From the NCBI RefSeq assembly GCF_002113885.1, contig NW_018479978.1, forward strand, positions 1 through 64,000: a stretch of DNA of 64,000 nucleotides, given 5' to 3'. The notes below the pieces were generated by a model. That model had not been told where the DNA came from. It was given only the letters and a program-made list of their open reading frames with translations, and searched no databases. A program made the position numbers and the translations under genes. Positions 6,455 to 15,300 of the stretch are shown here, piece after piece (the stretch's first letter is position 1; each line of letters begins with the position of its first letter). This DNA is from Mizuhopecten yessoensis. Taxonomy: Eukaryota.

Positions 6455-6905
6455 AAGACTCTTTCATGCCCAAAGTTGTAGGATAGGAAAATCCTGAGGG
6501 TGGAATTTCCCTATCTTGGGCATGAAAGAGTATTTTTCTCAAATTCCTGAAATGGCGTTTGGACTGGCTACCTTTTTGAAAACATCAATTTCCCCCTGAG
6601 CATTTTAGACGAAAACGAATCTGTCAGCCAGATTAAGTATATTCCATATTTTCAAACAAAGTTTGTGCAGAAAACGTAAACTCGTCTTTCTAACCTGTAA
6701 GGTAAATATATTGTAAAAGATTTTAATATCATGACGATGCCTTTTCTGCATTGTGGAACCACAGTTTTCCAAATTTGTGACGTCATGTCATTGTCGAGCC
6801 ATTGTGACGTCACGTCACGTGAAATGGGGTGTAGGATAGAGATTTCCTACACCCCTTTCTTACCCTGGACAGCTCTTTCTTACACACACGAAATGAGAGA
6901 AAAAT
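6455..6905. mobile_element. Degenerate hairpin element with the same architecture as 62701-63050
   Basis: Perfect 16-bp inverted repeat 6458-6473 / 6516-6531 followed by TTTTTCTC. It has an internal GTGACGTCA cluster, a second hairpin GGGGTGTAGGA..TCCTACACCCC near 6830-6856, and ends GAGAGAAAA. Confidence 0.5.
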
Positions 6906-7062
6906 GTCTACTAAATGCTATTTGTTGTCTGCAGTAATCCCAACGCCTACTTTTGTCAGAGTTCATGTGTTAGCCTCATGGGCTTATTTCAGGATAAATA
7001 TGGTCCAATCACTGTATGTGGAATGCATCTTTCTTATATGTTCTATGTAGAAATGTAGGTAC

Positions 7063-7498
7063 TGTAACATGCAGGCGATCACACCTCCAGTTACTGACCA
7101 CACTCGACGTTGCTGAACCAGTGAACGAGTCCCCATATTATACAGCATTACTGGAAAAGCTAGCTTGTCAGTAAGGCAGTATTTTCCACTTTAATTCCTT
7201 AGCTGTAACACAATTTCCCCCGCTGAGAAGTTTTGTCCCGAGACTTGGCCAGGATAATCCCGTAGGTCCTCCTTGTGTATCAATGCACCTTTCCCTAACC
7301 ATTGGGAACTGGCCTTACATGATCGCTCAGATTCCAACCGCTGCCACCAAATGTAACGTGCAGGCAGTCACCCGTCCAGCTACTGACCAAACTCAATGTT
7401 ACTGAACTAGTGAGCGGGTCCCCAGGTTATACTGCATCACTGGAAAAGCTAGCTTGCTAGTAAGGCAGTATTTTCCACCGAATTCTTAAGCTGTTACA
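7063..7498 (-). mobile_element. TRIM (miniature non-autonomous LTR retroelement) with 5S rRNA-like sequence in both LTRs
   Basis: Direct repeats 7063-7210 and 7352-7498, each TGT..ACA. The 4-bp TSD GTAC is at 7059-7062 and 7499-7502. A minus-strand PBS TGGTGGCAGCGG (within 7331-7349) is complementary to the tRNA-Leu 3' end, and a purine run GGGGGAAA precedes the 3' LTR. 5S-like segments lie at 7072-7118 and 7361-7407. Confidence 0.88.
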
Positions 7499-8169
7499 GT
7501 ACATTTGATTGTCATATATCTTATTGTAAGTTATAAACTAAGTTGAAGTAAAATCGCTATAGGATGTGAGCTATATTGTAATAAGTTTGTCTTACCAGTA
7601 TTTTTTTATGTGAGTGTAAAATCAATGTACAAGGTACTTGTCAGATGTCTAAATGAAAGTATCAGCAGTCACTGTGTGCAGTGGTGTGTGTGATATCTCT
7701 TATTGTGTATGAAATATTGATGAGGAAAGAATTGATTGGAACGATGCTTAACTCAAATAAATGTTGGCATGTCTGCTCATTTCTGATAGGGTGTTATTGG
7801 TAAATGCTGATGAAGAGGAATAAAGACGTGTATTTTGTCACATGTTACCTTGCAGTTTTCATTCATTCTTGTGTAAACTACTCACTGTAAATGTTTGATA
7901 GCAGTAAGATAGTGTTAAGTGTTTTATGCGGACCAAATATCTTCTTGAATTTAATGATACAGGTGAATTATTGTTGATCCAAACAACTAAGAGTTAATAA
8001 GAGTTGTTCCAAAAACATGCCTTACTGTATTCGAAGAATACTAAGGTAAGAAAATACTCTTTAAAGAAATACATGTTTCCATCCATACACATATCTGATT
8101 CCGGGTACTTTGCATGTAAATTGATTTGTGATGGTTTCTGTGGAAAAAATCCAAATTTTCAGTGTACTA

Positions 8170-8930
8170 GTATCTAGACCGGGAACATTGACCAAAACCA
8201 CTACCTGGGCACATCTGTTACTACTGGGCCCAGCTGTTACAAGTATTTAGACCTCAAATATTGACTAAAACCTCCTCTAGGCCTTGGTGTTACTTGTATC
8301 TAGACAGAGAAAACTGACCAAAACAACTCGTAACTAATTTGCCTGGTTGTACTTCCTAGTATCAAGACAGGGAACACTGACCTAAACCCCCATCATTGCC
8401 TGGGTATTACTTGTATCTATACAAGGAACACTGACCAAAAACCCCTACCTGGATCCGGTTGTCACTAGAATCAAGACAGGGAACGCTGACCTAAACCTCC
8501 TTCGTTGCCTGGGTATTACTTGTATCTAGACAAGGAACACTGACCAAAACCTCTACCTGGACCGGTTGTTAATGGAATCAAAACAAGAATTTTAAAATTT
8601 GTAGTTACTATAAGCTAGACAGGGAACACGGACCAAAACTTCTAACCTGGTCAGGGTATGACTAGTGTCTAGATAGAGAACACTGACCTAAATCTCGATC
8701 ATATCGTCCGGGTATCGCAATGTACTAGTTTTAGACGGGGAACATTGACCAAAAGCACTACTTTGCCTTGTAGTTACTAGTAGCTAGACAGGAAACACTG
8801 GCCGATACTTCTAACTTGGTCAGGTTGTTACTTGTATCTAGTAGACTAAGTACGCTAACTGAAACCGTGATCTAGCTCGAATTGTTATTTATCTTGACAG
8901 GAAACATTGACCAACACCTCTATTGTTACT
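8170..8930. repeat. Degenerate ~55-60-bp tandem repeat
   Basis: Recurrent CTAGACAGGGAACACTGACCAAAAC, about 12 copies. Confidence 0.8.
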
Positions 8931-11900
8931 TGTGAAAGCCAGTGAGGCTTTGAACAGTGATTACCTGGTTAACTGGAAATTCTTGTTTATTTCTAATATG
9001 ATCCATTTATCTTAATTTTGCTCTATGATGGAAAAATCATTATTTTTACCATAAAACCCCAGACGATCTCCACACCCTGTATTGGTTATGTCGTGCATAC
9101 TTTCAGGATTCCCTTAAAAGATTTTTAGTTTGAAGTCCTTACTTTTTTTATTAGATACCAAAACAAGGTTCAACTCAAACATATAAAGGTACCGGTACAT
9201 ATAGCACTTATTAGGGGTTACTACTTTCTTGTCCATTCTAGTCTGAAATGGGTGTAAAATGGGTGTCGTACACTTCATCAAAAATAAACAGTATTTTTGA
9301 AATTTGTTGTCTTTTTTCCTTAACTTTATGAGAACAAACTGCTAAATTTGGTTCCATTTCATGACACTGTATCAGGAGATAAGATTCATAACCAGTACAT
9401 GTAATAGGTTAACAGAGACCAAGTTTGATTTTAAGTGAAAATTGCTCAAATCTAAAAGCATAAACAATATTCTGAATCTGAAAAACTTCCAACTTCATAG
9501 GAAGTTATGGGGCTATAACCCCTTATTCAATTGCTGAAACAGTGTCAGCATAATATCTTGGTGAACTTTCAATCAATAACTGCAAACTTCATAGAAAGGT
9601 TAATTATCATGAAAATGCAGACAAGTTTGATAACCACCGTTATCTTACCATAATTGATAGTTATGGCCCTTTATGGCATTGCCAAAACATTGTCTTGATT
9701 CTCAGACAAGTTTGATAAGTACCATTATCCGACAATTATTAATGGAGTAATGGCCCTTTATCCACCCTTATCTGACAGTAATTACCGAGTTCTGGCTTTT
9801 TAATAAATTGCCGAAAGAGTCTGTTTTATATCTGGAGTAATTTTCAACAGATTATCTTCAAAGGAAGGTTAATTACCATAAAAACACAAATTGGATAACC
9901 ACCATTATCTGACCATAACTGATAAAGTAATTACCTACATTGAATTGTCAAAACATTCTCGATAATTGAACACTCAGACAAGTTCAATTAACACTATTAT
10001 CGGACTGTAATCATGGCCCTTTATATCCATTCCTTCAGCTTTGTCAAGTACAGTATGTTTTATCCTGCCACCACATCAAAGGAATAGCTCTCAACTTCAC
10101 CGAGTAATAAACATTTCCTTATTTTCATACATTTAACACATAAATGCATCAGAAGGATTGTAAATTATTGATAACAGTGCCTTGTGATAACATACCCATA
10201 TACCAGGTTTAGTTCATACGTTAAATAGTACGCCAAACTGAAATAAGGGATCAAAGGTCAACAGAGGTTGCAAAAATTTCTCCCGACATTGTTGCAAGAA
10301 GGTATATTATTTTGTCCTTTTGTTTATCTTGTTCAGTCTAAAACAAAGACACTTAATGATTTTACATGTTTATTATTTCATTTGTACAACATTCACATCT
10401 ACCTAAGTCAAGTGCATCGTCAGCCCAGACACATATAAACAAGACTGGGTAACGACAAGACTCGGCCAGCTACACAGAAGTAGAAAAAGCTGGGAAACGA
10501 CACTTCCAAACATAGGACATTTTAGAAAGACAGAGTTCAGAATCTCCCCTTCTTTAAATCCCTCTAAATATTTGCATCATGTTTGGTAGGTAATTTGGAA
10601 ACAAGATAAAAAAAATAAGCTAAAATATTACAATAACATGTACTCACGTATTTCATAGTCATCCAACTTAATGGCCTTTCAATTTGTTTTAAAGCAAAAA
10701 GGATTTCAATATTTAAATCTATGTCTGGCTATTTTCTTTAAAAAGTGCTTCAATCCAAAAGTACCTAAAGTCTGCTACAATCAATACCACAATTTGCTTG
10801 ACTTAATAGATGGAAAAGGACAGTCAGAATACTGGTGCCCCAGTTCCAAAATACTTCATGAAAACCATTTTTGAGACTTAAAGTCTTATATTTCAGTTAG
10901 AAAACAAATCATCCAAAAATATTCATATAAAGTTTCTTGAAAGCAGGGCCAGACTTGTGGACTAGAAAGTCTTGGATTGACAAAGCACATTTTTCCTAAA
11001 ATCATTACCTTCAGTTAAAACAGATTTGCAGATGAAAAATGTTTGTGCCAAATTCAACAAAGAATAACTATTTTCTATATACACTTACATATTTCACCTG
11101 TACATTTCTCATGAACAGGTACACATTGTTATAAATAAAGCTAAAAGACCCAATCTCATCTGTGTTTCTAACTTTACAGATCATACTCTGATTATCCTAA
11201 GAAGATTCACAACATGACTTGGATTACAATGAAAAGTTAAGCTAGTGGACCTGTACATATGATACACACTTTATAGAAAATCATTATTGTTGTAAGAGTC
11301 GAGATTCTCAATGACTCGGGTATCCTGTTGAAACCGAATCACTGAATCTAATACCAAGTATAAAGCATAGTAAATATATAGGAAAAACTACCATATACTT
11401 TTATTGTACAACATTCAAAACCATGGCTTTTTATCACCAATAACATTTGCACCAGTAGAGATGTTGAAATGTTTCAATTCTCTTACAACATATACATGTA
11501 CAGCATCAATCATTACTAATAATACATGCGTACAAATCTTTTACAAGTAACAGAGGAACTGTAGGTGTAGGAAACCAAATGATGCCAGCCAACATGTAGT
11601 GTCCATGAAAAGTACAATCTAAGTGCCCAGGAAATATAGCAACCTGCTTTTCATTAGACAGACAGGTACATTTCAAAGCCACTGTTTGTACTCAACAGAA
11701 AGCTACTGTTATAGGCCAGTTTGTACCTGACAGGTATTGTACAAACAGAACCCTGTTATTATATCAGCTAATTAAATGAGGTATTTGATATTTACTGCCA
11801 CTTTGAATTATGAATATAACTAGAAGGAAGTAGTTTTAAACTGAACTTCTTTCGAACTGATGGCTTTCAAATTTTTCACCATGGAAAGAAATTTCTGTTT

Positions 11901-12391
11901 CAGAGGAGCACTATGATCCAACTTGTCTTTTCCAGGAACATAATTATTAATAGACAATTAAAAGTGATAAGATTTTAACTCCTCAAGCTTTAAAATTGAT
12001 TTAAAGATTTTAACTCCTCAAGCTTTATGAAGAATTAAGCTTGGTATTAACTGATCACACAGAGGAGTTCCATCCAGATCAGCTCCCAATATGTTATCAA
12101 CCATGTTGAGATCTGGTAAGAATATGAGTTTATATATGGAATGCTCTACAAATATTAGAGTCGATCATCAAATACAGCAATGCGATTGTTCACCAAGTAA
12201 AAAGTTATAAAAGAGTTTTTCCTGATTTCTGTATGATTTAGACCCTAGTTCGGCTTCACTCCACACTACATACACATTTGGATTTCCCGCACACCAGCAA
12301 CACATCCTTGCGCTAGCTGTCTGCCTACGACATGGCCTGCCATCCGATGGTCACGACAAAAGAAAACAAAATAGCCTAATAAGTGATCCTG

Positions 12392-15300
12392 CTATTCAGT
12401 TTTTAACTTTTTCCGACGGCCTTGTGATAGTTCACCTTCTGCAGAGCTTTCCGACTCTGATCCACCATCAAATGTCAGTGCACTATTTTTCGAACTAACT
12501 GTGCCCGATTGGGCAAATTGTCCTGTACTCCTAGCTTTGTCCAATCCCCGAACTGAAACACACAAATCATATCAATGTAAGTATACAATGAAATTCATAG
12601 TCTGGACAGTTGTTCAGGTTTAAAATGAAAAATGAAATAAACCAATTTGTTTTATAGCAAATAAAATGCAGAGATGAAAGTCAATGTTACTTAAATACAA
12701 TACACTGCACATTTTCAGTGCGGGGTGCAAATTTCGTTAAAATATCGTCAACAGTTTCAACAATTTACAACCTGAAAAGTCTCGTTGACTTAAAAGTGTA
12801 GGTCAAGGTGACTTAATTTGGTTACAGGTATTGACCCTACTTACAGTGCATTGCATACACTTTGAAGACGATGCAGACACATTTCAAGTTTCATCAAGAT
12901 ATGTTAGTGGTTTAAAACTTACAGCATGGACTTTCATTAAAAACTTTGCATTCATTTGACCGGTGCCCTATTGCAACACACTGTCTGGTCATGATGAATA
13001 AACAAAATTAAATGGAATTTCTGTAGGATCTCCTATAGCTATATATATTAATCATATGGCAGAATCTACTGATATGTTCACTTGTCCTTCATTCTTATGA
13101 AAAGTATCATTAGTCTATCACAATCACAAAATACATAATTACAGTATTCAATGGGAGACCATCAGATATCTGTATATATTAACATTTAAGTTTCAGAAGG
13201 TGAGATTGCAGTATAATTACCACATCATTCAATTGAGAAATATGTATGCTTATCAACAGTTGCACAGCCTTCTCATGTTCACTTAAGCATTAACATTACA
13301 AGAATAAATTTAAGAAATACATCACATTTTTATAATAAGATTATATATAAAGCTTACTTTGTTGTTCTAGAATTGAGTTTTGTTTCTTTAAATCATCAAT
13401 ATCTTCTTGGTGGCCATGATTTTTCTTCCTCATAAATTGAATATAGTCTGCAGCCTTCTTCAGGATCTGGGCTCGAGATACCTACAAGGTCAAAAAATAG
13501 TGCATCATTCTATAAAACCAAACCTGAAATAGCATTTCTTACTGACAAAAATATTATTTAGATTTTACGATTCCAGTATTATGAGCAAGCTCTAGTTATA
13601 CACAATAATGTACATGTTACCTGTCTTTCACCAGATACAGTTATACTTTTTATCAATTCTAAATAAGCACTTGCATTACATATGCATAATTTTCTCAAAA
13701 TTTGTGTCTATATACATAATATGAAAGACAATCAGATTGCAGTAATTTTTCAAATATTCAAGTTTATACTTATAGTTTCATTCTGAAAATAACAAGAGGC
13801 CAATGGGCCTTAACTGTCTGTCATCTAAGTTGTACTATAGTTATTCTTTTACAAAAAACATTCAGATTCATTATATTACTAAATGAAAAATAAGAGTAGC
13901 AACCTTTTTTCTATACATAGCAGTAGAGCAGTCTGGACACTAAGTGGGCTGGCTACATGAACACTTATGGTGAGGCCCGAGGGGCAGGCTTTTTTTGTTT
14001 TTTGTTTTTTTTACAATACTCATATACATGTAGTGCTTCACATATGAAAGATATCCAAAACCATTGTTTCCTTGTACACTAGTACTATCTGACGACCTTA
14101 AAAATATCACTTTGTGACATATGTCAGGATTTGGGATGAGTTTTGCTAAAATTTACTTAAAATTTTCCAATTGGCTTTAAACTGAAAACTACATGTACAT
14201 GTATGTCAGGATATCCTCAGAATACATTAATGCATATGGTAGAATAACCCTCTGTTTCTAATGTACATATGATCAATGGCCCCTGCTCTCCTGCTTTGTG
14301 AAGATGAAAGTTGCTACAATTACAAATGAGAGAAATAAAAAACCATCAGAACTAAAAGTACATTTACTTTCTCTCCTTGCAGGGCTGGCACTGAGTCTCG
14401 TAGGCTATGAAAACTCTCTTTTATGTGGTCACGTCTTTTCCTTTCTAAGGCATTATGGTGGGCACGCTTCTCAGACTATAATAAAAAAATATATATATAA
14501 TAATAAAATAAATAACAATTAATAAATAATGCACACAACTTCAATGCAAAAGTTCAAATTACTAATGAAAAATATTAAATGCAACTTGAGCAAATGAAGA
14601 TCTAGCAGCAAAAACAGGTGCCATTATTATTTTGTATATAATGTAATTTGCCCATTTACCACTCAAGGAAATTCCCAATTTACATGGACTATGGAGCCAG
14701 TTTAAAAATTAAAACAAAAGTTTTGTAAACAACATTTAAATGGTAAATTGCAATAAGTTACCACAAACGACAATGCACATTCACACTTCAACGAACATAT
14801 ATGTTTATCTACGTACATATTTATGTATGGTACCTGGGGGAAAAAAAGAACTGATAAATTGTGAATACCTCAAAACTTTATCTCCATATATACTTATGCA
14901 TTAAAGGTCATATAAATATATACATATATATAACATATGTGGTTATTGTCAGTTTTATTATTATATTTTTTTTCCATGAATTTCAATTCAGCAGCTTTTT
15001 AGTTCAGTTTTTGTTATGAAGCAGTAATCAATGTTGTAGAACAAAGCACAGTATGGTAAGTAATCTCCAGGCTCCAGCCAAACTTCCGCATTAGATAATA
15101 TGAACAAAGGGCCACAACTCTGTATACAGAGGGGAACAAGACCAAAATTCAATATGCACCACTCTGCCTTCCTAAGAGTTTCTCATCAGCACGCAAAACA
15201 TGACAATTAGAGGTGACAAACAAATAGTCTGTGAGAAGGGAAACATCTACACTGTTATTCTAATGGCAGTAGATCAACATACTGAGGTCATCGTTGCTTT

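What the first reader, a model, noticed from the sequence alone, without database searches (positions are those of the whole stretch)
7063..7498. Miniature LTR retroelement whose LTRs carry a 5S rRNA internal promoter (Cassandra/Ajax-like) in a probable mollusc
Seen: two ~148-bp TGT..ACA direct repeats, an exact 4-bp TSD (GTAC), a tRNA-Leu PBS, a purine tract on the minus strand, a 141-bp non-coding interior and no ORF, so this is a TRIM. Each LTR, read in element sense, contains GTTCAGCAACGTCGAGTGTGGTCAGTAACTGGAGGTGTGATCGCCTG (copy 2 ends ..TGGACGGGTGACTGCCTG). This aligns without gaps at about 37/47 to the box A-IE-box C region of molluscan 5S rRNA as I remember it (GTTAAGCAACGTCGAGCCCGGTTAGTACTTGGATGGGTGACCGCCTG). 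Established: plant Cassandra TRIMs carry 5S sequence in their LTRs; as I recall, animal 5S-TRIMs (Ajax) were reported from nemerteans with 5-bp TSDs. Inference: this may be an undescribed, independently arisen pol III (TFIIIA)-driven TRIM family. The 4-bp TSD suggests a Gypsy-type helper.
Basis: partly seen in the sequence, partly recalled or inferred. Interest (0 to 1): 0.9.

Follow-up and report, generated by a model that had tools for sequence, protein, structure and literature searches.

The report
Scallop mini-retroelement with 5S promoter LTRs
This is an old, fixed copy of a several-hundred-copy miniature LTR retrotransposon in a scallop genome whose LTRs carry the promoter part of the 5S rRNA gene; that design was known from plants (Cassandra) and ribbon worms (Ajax), and I found no report of it in molluscs.

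Summary
Window 7063-7498 is a 436-bp TRIM read on the minus strand. It has 147/148-nt TG..CA LTRs, a GTAC target-site duplication, a tRNA-Leu primer-binding site, a purine tract, a 141-bp interior and no ORF.

It belongs to a dispersed family in this genome:
- There are at least 163 LTRs by a strict motif count and about 700 first-look candidates.
- Most copies are solo LTRs.
- Different copies carry different 4-bp duplications.

LTR positions about 83-139 derive from 5S rRNA positions about 39-97. That is box A, the intermediate element and box C, in element sense. An LTR profile finds the 5S genes of this genome at E = 4e-7 and 3e-6. Typical copies match mollusc-type 5S better than the window copy does. 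The Rfam 5S model does not match, so this is a promoter fragment and not a 5S gene.

The genome is a pectinid scallop, most likely Mizuhopecten yessoensis. The family is old: no copy is more than 87% identical to a central copy.

Papers that I could search report 5S-bearing TRIMs only from plants and two nemerteans. This is therefore a new member of a known kind. Pol III drive, independent origin and the helper element remain inferences. First readers of this scan flagged the same family on two other pieces of this genome.

The parts
7059..7062 (.). Target-site duplication GTAC on the 3' side of the element
   Evidence: It is identical to 7499-7502.
7063..7210 (-). 3' LTR, 148 nt, TGTTACA...TGTTACA in element sense
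   Evidence: It is 83-85% identical to the 5' LTR.
7072..7128 (-). 5S rRNA-derived module of the 3' LTR (LTR positions about 83-139, 5S positions about 39-97: box A, IE, box C)
7155..7158 (-). The only T4 run of the 3' LTR in element sense (LTR 53-56). It is a possible pol III stop and the 3' end of a short R.
   Evidence: a T>=4 run lies at this position in 50 of 55 LTRs and nowhere else in the LTRs.
7211..7223 (-). Polypurine tract region (GCGGGGGAAATTG), with the purine run at 7214-7221
   Evidence: Family copies read GGAGGGGGGAATAG.
7211..7351 (-). Non-coding internal domain, 141 nt
7332..7349 (-). [quoted passage not shown]
   Evidence: plus Fig. S3 of PMC10886601.
7352..7498 (-). 5' LTR, 147 nt
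7361..7408 (-). 5S rRNA-derived module of the 5' LTR (LTR 91-138 aligned to 5S 50-97 without gaps)
   Evidence: score 31, and none of 2000 shuffles reaches it.
7444..7447 (-). T4 run of the 5' LTR (LTR 52-55). The start site predicted for a 5S-type promoter lies about 10 nt upstream, near 7456-7457.
   Evidence: The start site is an inference from the usual distance of about 50 bp between the start site and box A in 5S genes.
7499..7502 (.). Target-site duplication GTAC on the 5' side of the element

Best explanation
Window 7063-7498 (minus strand) is an old, fixed insertion of a non-autonomous miniature LTR retrotransposon (TRIM). The family has several hundred copies, mostly solo LTRs, in a pectinid scallop genome. 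Shown: the LTR-PBS-interior-PPT-LTR anatomy, 4-bp target duplications that differ between copies, priming-site complementarity to host tRNA-Leu(AAG/UAG), and descent of the 3' third of each LTR from 5S rRNA positions about 39-97 in the same orientation as the element. Inferred: while the family was active, this module served as a type-1 (TFIIIA-dependent) internal pol III promoter. It retains just the internal control region of a 5S gene and lies about 10 nt from the LTR end. A 5S-type promoter would start transcription about 50 bp upstream, at LTR position about 43. The transcript would run through U5, the PBS, the interior, the PPT and U3. It would end either at the single conserved T4 run of the 3' LTR (positions 53-56), giving an R of about 14 nt, or further downstream. 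Reverse transcription and integration would be supplied in trans by an unidentified autonomous LTR retrotransposon whose integrase makes 4-bp duplications. In kind it is a molluscan counterpart of plant Cassandra and nemertean Ajax (the 'TRIMp3' of Kojima 2024).
For: Structure. Family and mobility: 570-691 first-look candidates with about 40 full-length copies at 74-87% identity. A 37-nt LTR motif occurs at 163 sites with up to 3 mismatches, against 0 for the control. Exact 4-bp TSDs are found in 6 of 17 full copies, where about 0.07 is expected by chance, and none has an exact 5- or 6-bp duplication. Solo LTRs carry the TSDs gatc, gtat, catt and caac. One tandem LTR-I-LTR-I-LTR array exists (L010). 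5S origin: 44 of 55 LTRs score above the maximum of 1100 shuffles against a 5S pseudogene of this genome, and 30 of 55 against a complete 5S gene. An nhmmer LTR profile lands exactly on those 5S sequences, with E = 4.1e-7 and 2.8e-6 in 20 kb. Typical copies match the mollusc-type 5S of L002 at 17-18 of 18 positions over 5S 50-67. PBS. The sense strand between the LTR T4 runs is nearly free of T>=4 runs. The retained 5S part coincides with the internal control region that suffices for accurate initiation in Xenopus 5S genes. That is established knowledge from Sakonju, Bogenhagen and Brown 1980, recalled from memory. Ajax retains the same part (PMC10886601).
Against: There is no evidence of pol III transcription. 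The only reads available were assembled contigs, and the 'RNA' runs cover the flanks as evenly as the element. The T4 run lies only about 10 nt downstream of the predicted start, so it could abort transcripts in the 5' LTR. T4 may also be too weak a stop, since the 5S gene in L001 ends in T5 and T7. Conservation along the LTR is nearly flat, 0.85-0.96 per 10-nt bin, so the copies show no clear extra constraint on the boxes. A conserved TATAA at LTR 69-73 would also allow a pol II start. The family shows no recent copies, so nothing can be seen in action. The canonical host 5S gene is not in the assembly, so the comparison rests on a divergent 5S gene, two truncated copies and a pseudogene.
Confidence: 0.8

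Rival explanations
1. The 5S fragment is a passenger. The TRIM was transcribed by pol II from U3 like ordinary TRIMs, and the 5S piece, captured by template switching or by a SINE insertion, merely sits in R-U5 without promoter function.
For: A TATAA is conserved at LTR 69-73 in most copies. There is no extra conservation of the boxes among copies. There is no evidence of expression. The T4 run sits just after the predicted pol III start.
Against: What is retained is just the internal control region (5S about 39-97), in sense orientation. It is intact in most of 55 LTRs and at least 163 genomic sites. The same limits are seen in the separately described Ajax. No AATAAA signal is present in the LTR (sequence). 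A random captured piece would not be expected to coincide twice with the promoter.
Confidence: 0.3
2. The element is not an independent invention. It belongs by descent to the Ajax lineage, or shares with it an ancient lophotrochozoan 5S-SINE or TRIM ancestor.
For: Both use a tRNA-Leu PBS. The sizes are 421-434 bp for Ajax and about 436 bp here. In both, the 5S module starts before box A and ends at 5S about 97, some 10-14 nt before the LTR end. By eye, both carry G at 5S position 68 and C at 73 where 5S genes have C and T (Data S1 of PMC10886601).
Against: The TSD is 4 bp here and 5 bp in Ajax. By eye the U3 parts and the interiors show no similarity. The Ajax PBS pairs over only 6 nt and lacks the CCA complement, against 18 nt here. 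The scallop module is closer to mollusc-type 5S (about 43 of 48 by eye) than to Ajax-1_LiLo (36 of 44 by eye). The hosts are in different phyla.
Confidence: 0.35
3. The 5S resemblance is chance, or the repeats are a local duplication and not a mobile element.
For: RF00001 gives no hit.
Against: See the shuffle and profile statistics, the hundreds of dispersed copies with their own 4-bp TSDs, and the PBS and PPT in the canonical places.
Confidence: 0.02

Closest known systems
Ajax (Ajax-1_NGe, Ajax-1_LiLo), the 5S-bearing TRIMs of the nemerteans Notospermus geniculatus and Lineus longissimus (Kojima 2024, PMC10886601)
   Same: It is an animal TRIM of about 430 bp with LTRs of about 150 nt. Only the box A-IE-box C part of 5S is present, at the 3' end of the LTR in sense orientation. 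It has a tRNA-Leu PBS. Solo LTRs far outnumber full copies. It does not encode a 5S RNA.
   Different: The TSD is 4 bp here, not 5 bp. The PBS pairs over 18 nt including the CCA complement, against 6 nt. The host phylum is Mollusca. By eye there is no similarity in U3 or in the interior. The family here is old and shows no recent copies.
Cassandra, the plant TRIM with 5S sequence in its LTRs (Kalendar et al. 2008, as summarised in PMC10946416 and PMC10886601)
   Same: It is an LTR-borne 5S promoter module, it is non-autonomous, and it forms tandem LTR-interior arrays (L010 here).
   Different: As I recall, Cassandra carries a near-complete 5S-like domain whose predicted fold resembles 5S RNA, with terminators. 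Here only half of the 5S sequence is present, RF00001 does not match and the RNA does not fold better than shuffles. Cassandra is 565-860 bp long and is found in plants.
Helenus, the tRNA-bearing TRIMs, including Helenus-1 to -4_MiYe of this scallop (PMC10886601)
   Same: It occurs in the same genome, has the same size class (405-425 bp), makes 4-bp TSDs and follows the same logic of a small-RNA promoter in the LTR.
   Different: Helenus LTRs carry a tRNA-like sequence and other PBS types. Here no tRNA is found, and the LTR profile finds nothing in 12 Helenus-2_MiYe LTR copies.
SINE3 and other 5S-derived SINEs (Kapitonov and Jurka 2003; HaSE3 and others)
   Same: They use a 5S-derived internal promoter as the head of a non-autonomous retroelement.
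   Different: SINEs have no LTRs, PBS or PPT and are mobilised by LINEs. All 20 sampled sites carrying this 5S-like motif are TRIM LTRs, not SINEs.
biv-TRIM of bivalves (Satovic et al. 2019, PMC6934838)
   Same: It is a TRIM in bivalves.
   Different: biv-TRIM has no canonical PBS and has a conserved TGATCCCAAAGGAC interior motif. No 5S sequence is reported for it.

Membership tests
TRIM (terminal-repeat retrotransposon in miniature) | Under 1 kb, with terminal direct repeats of about 100-250 bp that begin TG and end CA | tested here: met
   436 bp; LTRs of 147 and 148 nt, TGTAACA...TGTTACA.
TRIM (terminal-repeat retrotransposon in miniature) | PBS complementary to a tRNA 3' end directly after the 5' LTR, and a PPT directly before the 3' LTR | tested here: met
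   The PBS matches host tRNA-Leu(AAG/TAG) over 18 nt in 16 of 29 copies. The PPT is GGAGGGGGGAATAG or GGGGGAAA.
TRIM (terminal-repeat retrotransposon in miniature) | No coding capacity | tested here: met
   The interior is 141 nt and no ORF is present.
TRIM (terminal-repeat retrotransposon in miniature) | Dispersed copies with target-site duplications | tested here: met
[quoted passage not shown] | Small-RNA-derived sequence covering the promoter boxes inside the LTR | tested here: met
   5S positions about 39-97 lie in LTR 83-139.
[quoted passage not shown] | Transcription by RNA polymerase III from that promoter | not testable with these tools
   Only assembled contigs were available, and the 'RNA' runs cover flanks and element alike.
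Ajax (as a lineage) | Partial 5S sequence (box A, IE, box C) in the LTR | tested here: met
Ajax (as a lineage) | 5-bp target-site duplication | tested here: not met
   Six of 17 full copies and four solo LTRs have exact 4-bp TSDs. None of the 17 full copies has an exact 5-bp duplication.
Ajax (as a lineage) | Sequence similarity to Ajax-1_NGe or Ajax-1_LiLo outside the 5S part | tested here: inconclusive
   This rests only on a comparison by eye with Data S1, which showed none in U3 or the interior. The LTR tail matched at 9 of 13 positions.
Cassandra | Near-complete 5S-like domain with a 5S-like fold in the LTR; plant host | tested here: not met
   RF00001 gives no hit at E <= 10. The fold z-score is +1.6. 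The host is a scallop.
Helenus | tRNA-derived sequence with boxes A and B in the LTR | tested here: not met
   ARAGORN finds nothing and Rfam finds no tRNA in the element. nhmmer finds no match to Helenus-2_MiYe copies.
5S rRNA gene or pseudogene | Match to the whole 5S model (RF00001) | tested here: not met
   Positions 1-38 and 98-120 of 5S are absent.

The most novel reading that the evidence does not exclude
This is a separate, third capture of the 5S type-1 promoter by an LTR element, after plant Cassandra and nemertean Ajax. It forms a self-contained pol III transcription unit. The conserved T4 run about 10 nt downstream of the predicted start defines a genomic RNA with an R of only about 14 nt. 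The element was mobilised by a helper with a 4-bp-TSD integrase and primed by tRNA-Leu. This would show that LTR elements converge repeatedly on the same minimal promoter fragment.
Probability: 0.25. Interest if true: 0.65.

Novelty: new member of a known kind. Interest (0 to 1): 0.45.

Why it matters
LTR retroelements normally depend on pol II. Only Cassandra (plants, validated) and Ajax (two ribbon worms, inferred) are known to carry a 5S promoter in their LTRs. A molluscan family, in a genome that was screened for the tRNA-bearing Helenus but not for 5S-bearing TRIMs, widens the distribution of this design in animals. It also makes one question testable: whether the same minimal 5S fragment was captured repeatedly or inherited within Lophotrochozoa. 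In practice, such LTRs are a source of dispersed 5S-like sequence. They can confuse 5S rDNA annotation, and possibly FISH, in bivalves, whose true 5S arrays are often missing from assemblies, as they are here.

Tried and rejected
- **RF00001 covariance model.** It gave no hit on the window copy, on 20 loci or on a well-preserved copy. I rejected it as a test, because only half of the 5S sequence is present.
- **Canonical host 5S gene.** It was not found in the assembly by three patterns. I used a divergent 5S gene (L001), truncated copies (L002, L003) and a pseudogene (L004) instead.
- **Kinship with the scallop's own Helenus-2 TRIM.** It was suggested by eye but rejected by nhmmer.
- **Reads.** All runs are Logan contigs, and the two RNA-labelled runs cover the flanks at the same flat depth as the element. 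Nothing can be said about expression, start or end.
- **Younger copies.** None is above 87% identity to a central copy.
- **Helper element.** Two LTR motif pairs 7.4 kb and 1.35 kb apart turned out to be LTR fragments with no ORF of 150 aa or more between them. No helper was found.
- **LTR subfamilies.** No LTR column is diagnostic for the two PBS variants.
- **Other hosts.** Two metagenome pattern scans found nothing. No other mollusc genome was reachable.
- **Extra constraint on the boxes.** The conservation profile is nearly flat.
- **Left out.** I built and report no full-length consensus or ancestral sequence of the element.

Full report
**1. What is in the sequence**

Read on the minus strand, window 7498-7063 has the following parts:
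- a 147-nt LTR at 7498-7352;
- two T's;
- the primer-binding site TGGTGGCAGCGGTTGGAA at 7349-7332;
- a non-coding interior (7351-7211, 141 nt in all) that ends in the purine tract GCGGGGGAAATTG;
- a 148-nt LTR at 7210-7063.

The LTRs start TGTAACA and end TGTTACA, which is a 7-nt terminal inverted repeat. They are 83-85% identical. GTAC flanks both ends. There is no ORF of 90 aa or more from 6457 to 13000 and no tRNA gene.

**2. It is a mobile family, not a local duplication**

A search of the window's own genome (988 Mb, 82,659 contigs) found 570-691 first-look candidates. Among the 40 that were scored, about 40 copies are full-length or nearly so, at 74-87% identity. A 37-nt stretch of the LTR occurs unchanged at 12 sites and with up to three mismatches at 163 sites. 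The reversed control pattern found none.

All 20 sampled sites are LTRs of this family. About 14 of them are solo LTRs.

The evidence on target-site duplications is as follows:
- Of 17 full copies with both ends recognisable, 6 have an exact 4-bp duplication and 10 match at 3 or more of 4 positions.
- None of the 17 has an exact 5- or 6-bp duplication.
- The duplications differ between copies: GTAC, ACAC, TTAT, CTTT, GTAT and TTTC.
- Four solo LTRs have their own: gatc, gtat, catt and caac.

One locus, L010 (C76668:83985-84700), is a tandem LTR-interior-LTR-interior-LTR array.

The LTRs within an element are 74-89% identical, and no copy exceeds 87% identity to a central copy. The family therefore amplified long ago and shows no recent activity. 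Contigs of four sequencing runs span the left junction of the window copy, and 20 runs from 11 studies hold the stretch. The insertion therefore looks fixed.

**3. The primer**

Sixteen of 29 interiors begin TGGTGGCAGCGGTGGGAT. Host genes for tRNA-Leu(AAG) and tRNA-Leu(TAG) end in TTCGAATCCCACCGCTGCCA. With the added CCA, the PBS pairs with the last 18 nt of the mature tRNA.

About 12 copies carry a second variant, TGGTGGCAGCGTAGTGAC. It keeps the acceptor-stem part only. I did not identify a tRNA for it, and no LTR column separates the two groups.

**4. The 5S-derived module**

The genome holds these 5S sequences:
- one complete 5S gene, on a 629-bp contig (L001, 110.8 bits);
- two copies of a truncated mollusc-type 5S, positions 1-68 (L002, L003);
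- one 5S pseudogene (L004).

The canonical mollusc-type gene itself is not in the assembly.

Local alignment of the two window LTRs to the L001 gene gives scores of 31 and 26. The mean for 2000 dinucleotide shuffles is 14.8 +/- 2.2, and none reaches the observed score. The reverse strand scores at background.

Across 55 LTRs, 44 exceed the best of 1100 shuffles against L004 and 30 exceed it against L001. The aligned span is always LTR 91-138 against 5S 50-97. In 13 LTRs the match to L002 extends back to 5S position 39 with a 2-nt gap.

A profile of the 55 LTRs, searched with all filters off against the four 5S-bearing loci (20 kb), lands exactly on the 5S sequences. E is 4.1e-7 for L001 and 2.8e-6 for L004.

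Typical copies read AGTTCAGCAACGTCGAGCGTGGTCAGTAGTTGGATGGGTGACCGCC. That is closer to 5S than the decayed window copy is. Over 5S 50-67 they match L002 at 17-18 of 18 positions.

The module is in the same orientation as the element and ends about 10 nt before the LTR terminus. 5S positions 1-38 and 98-120 are not detectable.

Three results show that the element does not encode a 5S RNA:
- the Rfam 5S model finds nothing;
- the putative LTR transcript folds no better than shuffles, z = +1.6;
- only about half of the 5S sequence is present.

What it keeps is just the region that, in Xenopus 5S genes, forms the internal control region: box A, the intermediate element and box C. That is established knowledge, recalled from memory.

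**5. Host**

A 31-nt motif taken from the published Helenus-2_MiYe LTR of Mizuhopecten yessoensis (Data S1 of PMC10886601) occurs 1,156 times with up to 2 mismatches. Many sites form pairs 247 bp apart, which equals the published LTR plus interior, 158 + 89. The genome is therefore a pectinid scallop, most likely M. yessoensis.

**6. How it most likely worked**

Shown: the anatomy, the primer, the 4-bp duplications and the 5S origin.

Inferred: the module acted as a TFIIIA-type internal promoter.
- The usual 50-bp distance between start site and box A puts the start at LTR position about 43, near window 7456 in the 5' LTR.
- In element sense each LTR has a single T4 run, at positions 53-56, in 50 of 55 LTRs. 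There is no other T>=4 run anywhere in the LTRs. Only 2 of 29 interiors have one.
- A transcript starting at 43 would have to pass the T4 run of the 5' LTR. It could then stop at the T4 run of the 3' LTR, which would give an R of about 14 nt. Alternatively it could read on into the flank, which would give a longer R.

This is a model, not an observation. The closeness of the T4 run to the start, the flat conservation profile and a conserved TATAA at LTR 69-73 leave room for a pol II-driven element with a passenger 5S fragment.

**7. RNA evidence**

The runs offered are all assembled contigs. The two labelled RNA cover the flanks at the same flat depth as the element. They say nothing about expression, starts or ends.

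**8. Comparison with what is known**

Kojima 2024 (PMC10886601) described Ajax, a TRIM with the same partial 5S module. Ajax comes from two nemerteans, makes 5-bp TSDs, has a weak tRNA-Leu PBS and is 421-434 bp long.

The same paper described Helenus, the tRNA-bearing TRIMs, in this very scallop assembly. The 5S screen in that paper covered only the two nemertean genomes.

A 2024 review lists only Cassandra and Ajax as LTR elements with a 5S promoter (PMC10946416). Later papers that I could search add none. Papers on bivalve TEs do not mention one.

The scallop family shares these features with Ajax:
- the design and the module limits;
- the size;
- the tRNA-Leu primer;
- by eye, two substitutions within the 5S part, G at position 68 and C at position 73.

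It differs from Ajax in these respects:
- TSD length, 4 bp against 5 bp;
- PBS length, 18 nt against 6 nt;
- host phylum;
- by eye, all sequence outside the module.

The Ajax comparison is therefore by eye only, and independent origin versus common descent stays open. I put it at about 60:40 for independent origin.

The element is not Helenus and it is not the biv-TRIM of Satovic et al..

**9. Verdict**

This is a genuine, old TRIM family bearing a 5S promoter fragment, in a scallop, and I found no report of the design from molluscs in the searchable literature. It is a new member of a known kind. Pol III drive, independence from Ajax and the type of helper remain unproven.

First readers of this scan flagged the same family on two other pieces of this genome. 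I built no full-length consensus or ancestral sequence.

Noticed in passing
window 6755-6898: This is a very high-copy repeat immediately left of the element. Summed contig depth reaches about 16,000, against about 30 in the flanks, in an RNA-labelled run. It contains direct repeats TTGTGACGTCA(T/C)GTCA (6775-6817) and a 14-nt hairpin at 6823-6858. The type is unknown.
   Followed up: partly
window 6455-6534: An 80-bp perfect-stem hairpin with 19-nt arms, 95% complementary. It gives weak sub-threshold hits to MITE-derived plant miRNA families. It is probably a MITE or another fold-back repeat.
   Followed up: no
L001 = G000:C66098:23-141 (minus): This is the only complete 5S gene found (110.8 bits). 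It sits on a 629-bp contig with an N gap and differs from the mollusc-type 5S of L002-L004 at many positions, some apparently compensatory. It could be a divergent paralogue or foreign DNA. The canonical 5S rDNA is absent from the assembly.
   Followed up: partly
L002 (C5589:2980715-2980810) and L003 (C2985:626378-626473): These are two copies of a 5S gene truncated after position 68 and joined to unrelated sequence. They also have near-identical sequence upstream of 5S +1. They are therefore part of a larger duplicated unit or repeat, not a SINE.
   Followed up: no
G000, 1,156 sites (for example L044-L055): The LTR motif of the published tRNA-bearing TRIM Helenus-2_MiYe is abundant. Many sites are pairs 247 bp apart and many copies are exact, which suggests a much younger family than the 5S-bearing one.
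   Followed up: partly
L010 = G000:C76668:83985-84700; L075 = G000:C1613:1060794-1062230: L010 is a tandem LTR-interior-LTR-interior-LTR array of the 5S-TRIM. L075 is a head-to-head pair of copies. Such arrays are typical of LTR-LTR recombination and are also described for Cassandra.
   Followed up: no
L009 1989-2061 (minus): A tRNA-like sequence (RF00005, 32.2 bits, just above the gathering score) lies about 60 bp beyond the end of another copy of the TRIM. It is possibly a tRNA-derived SINE or a Helenus LTR.
   Followed up: no
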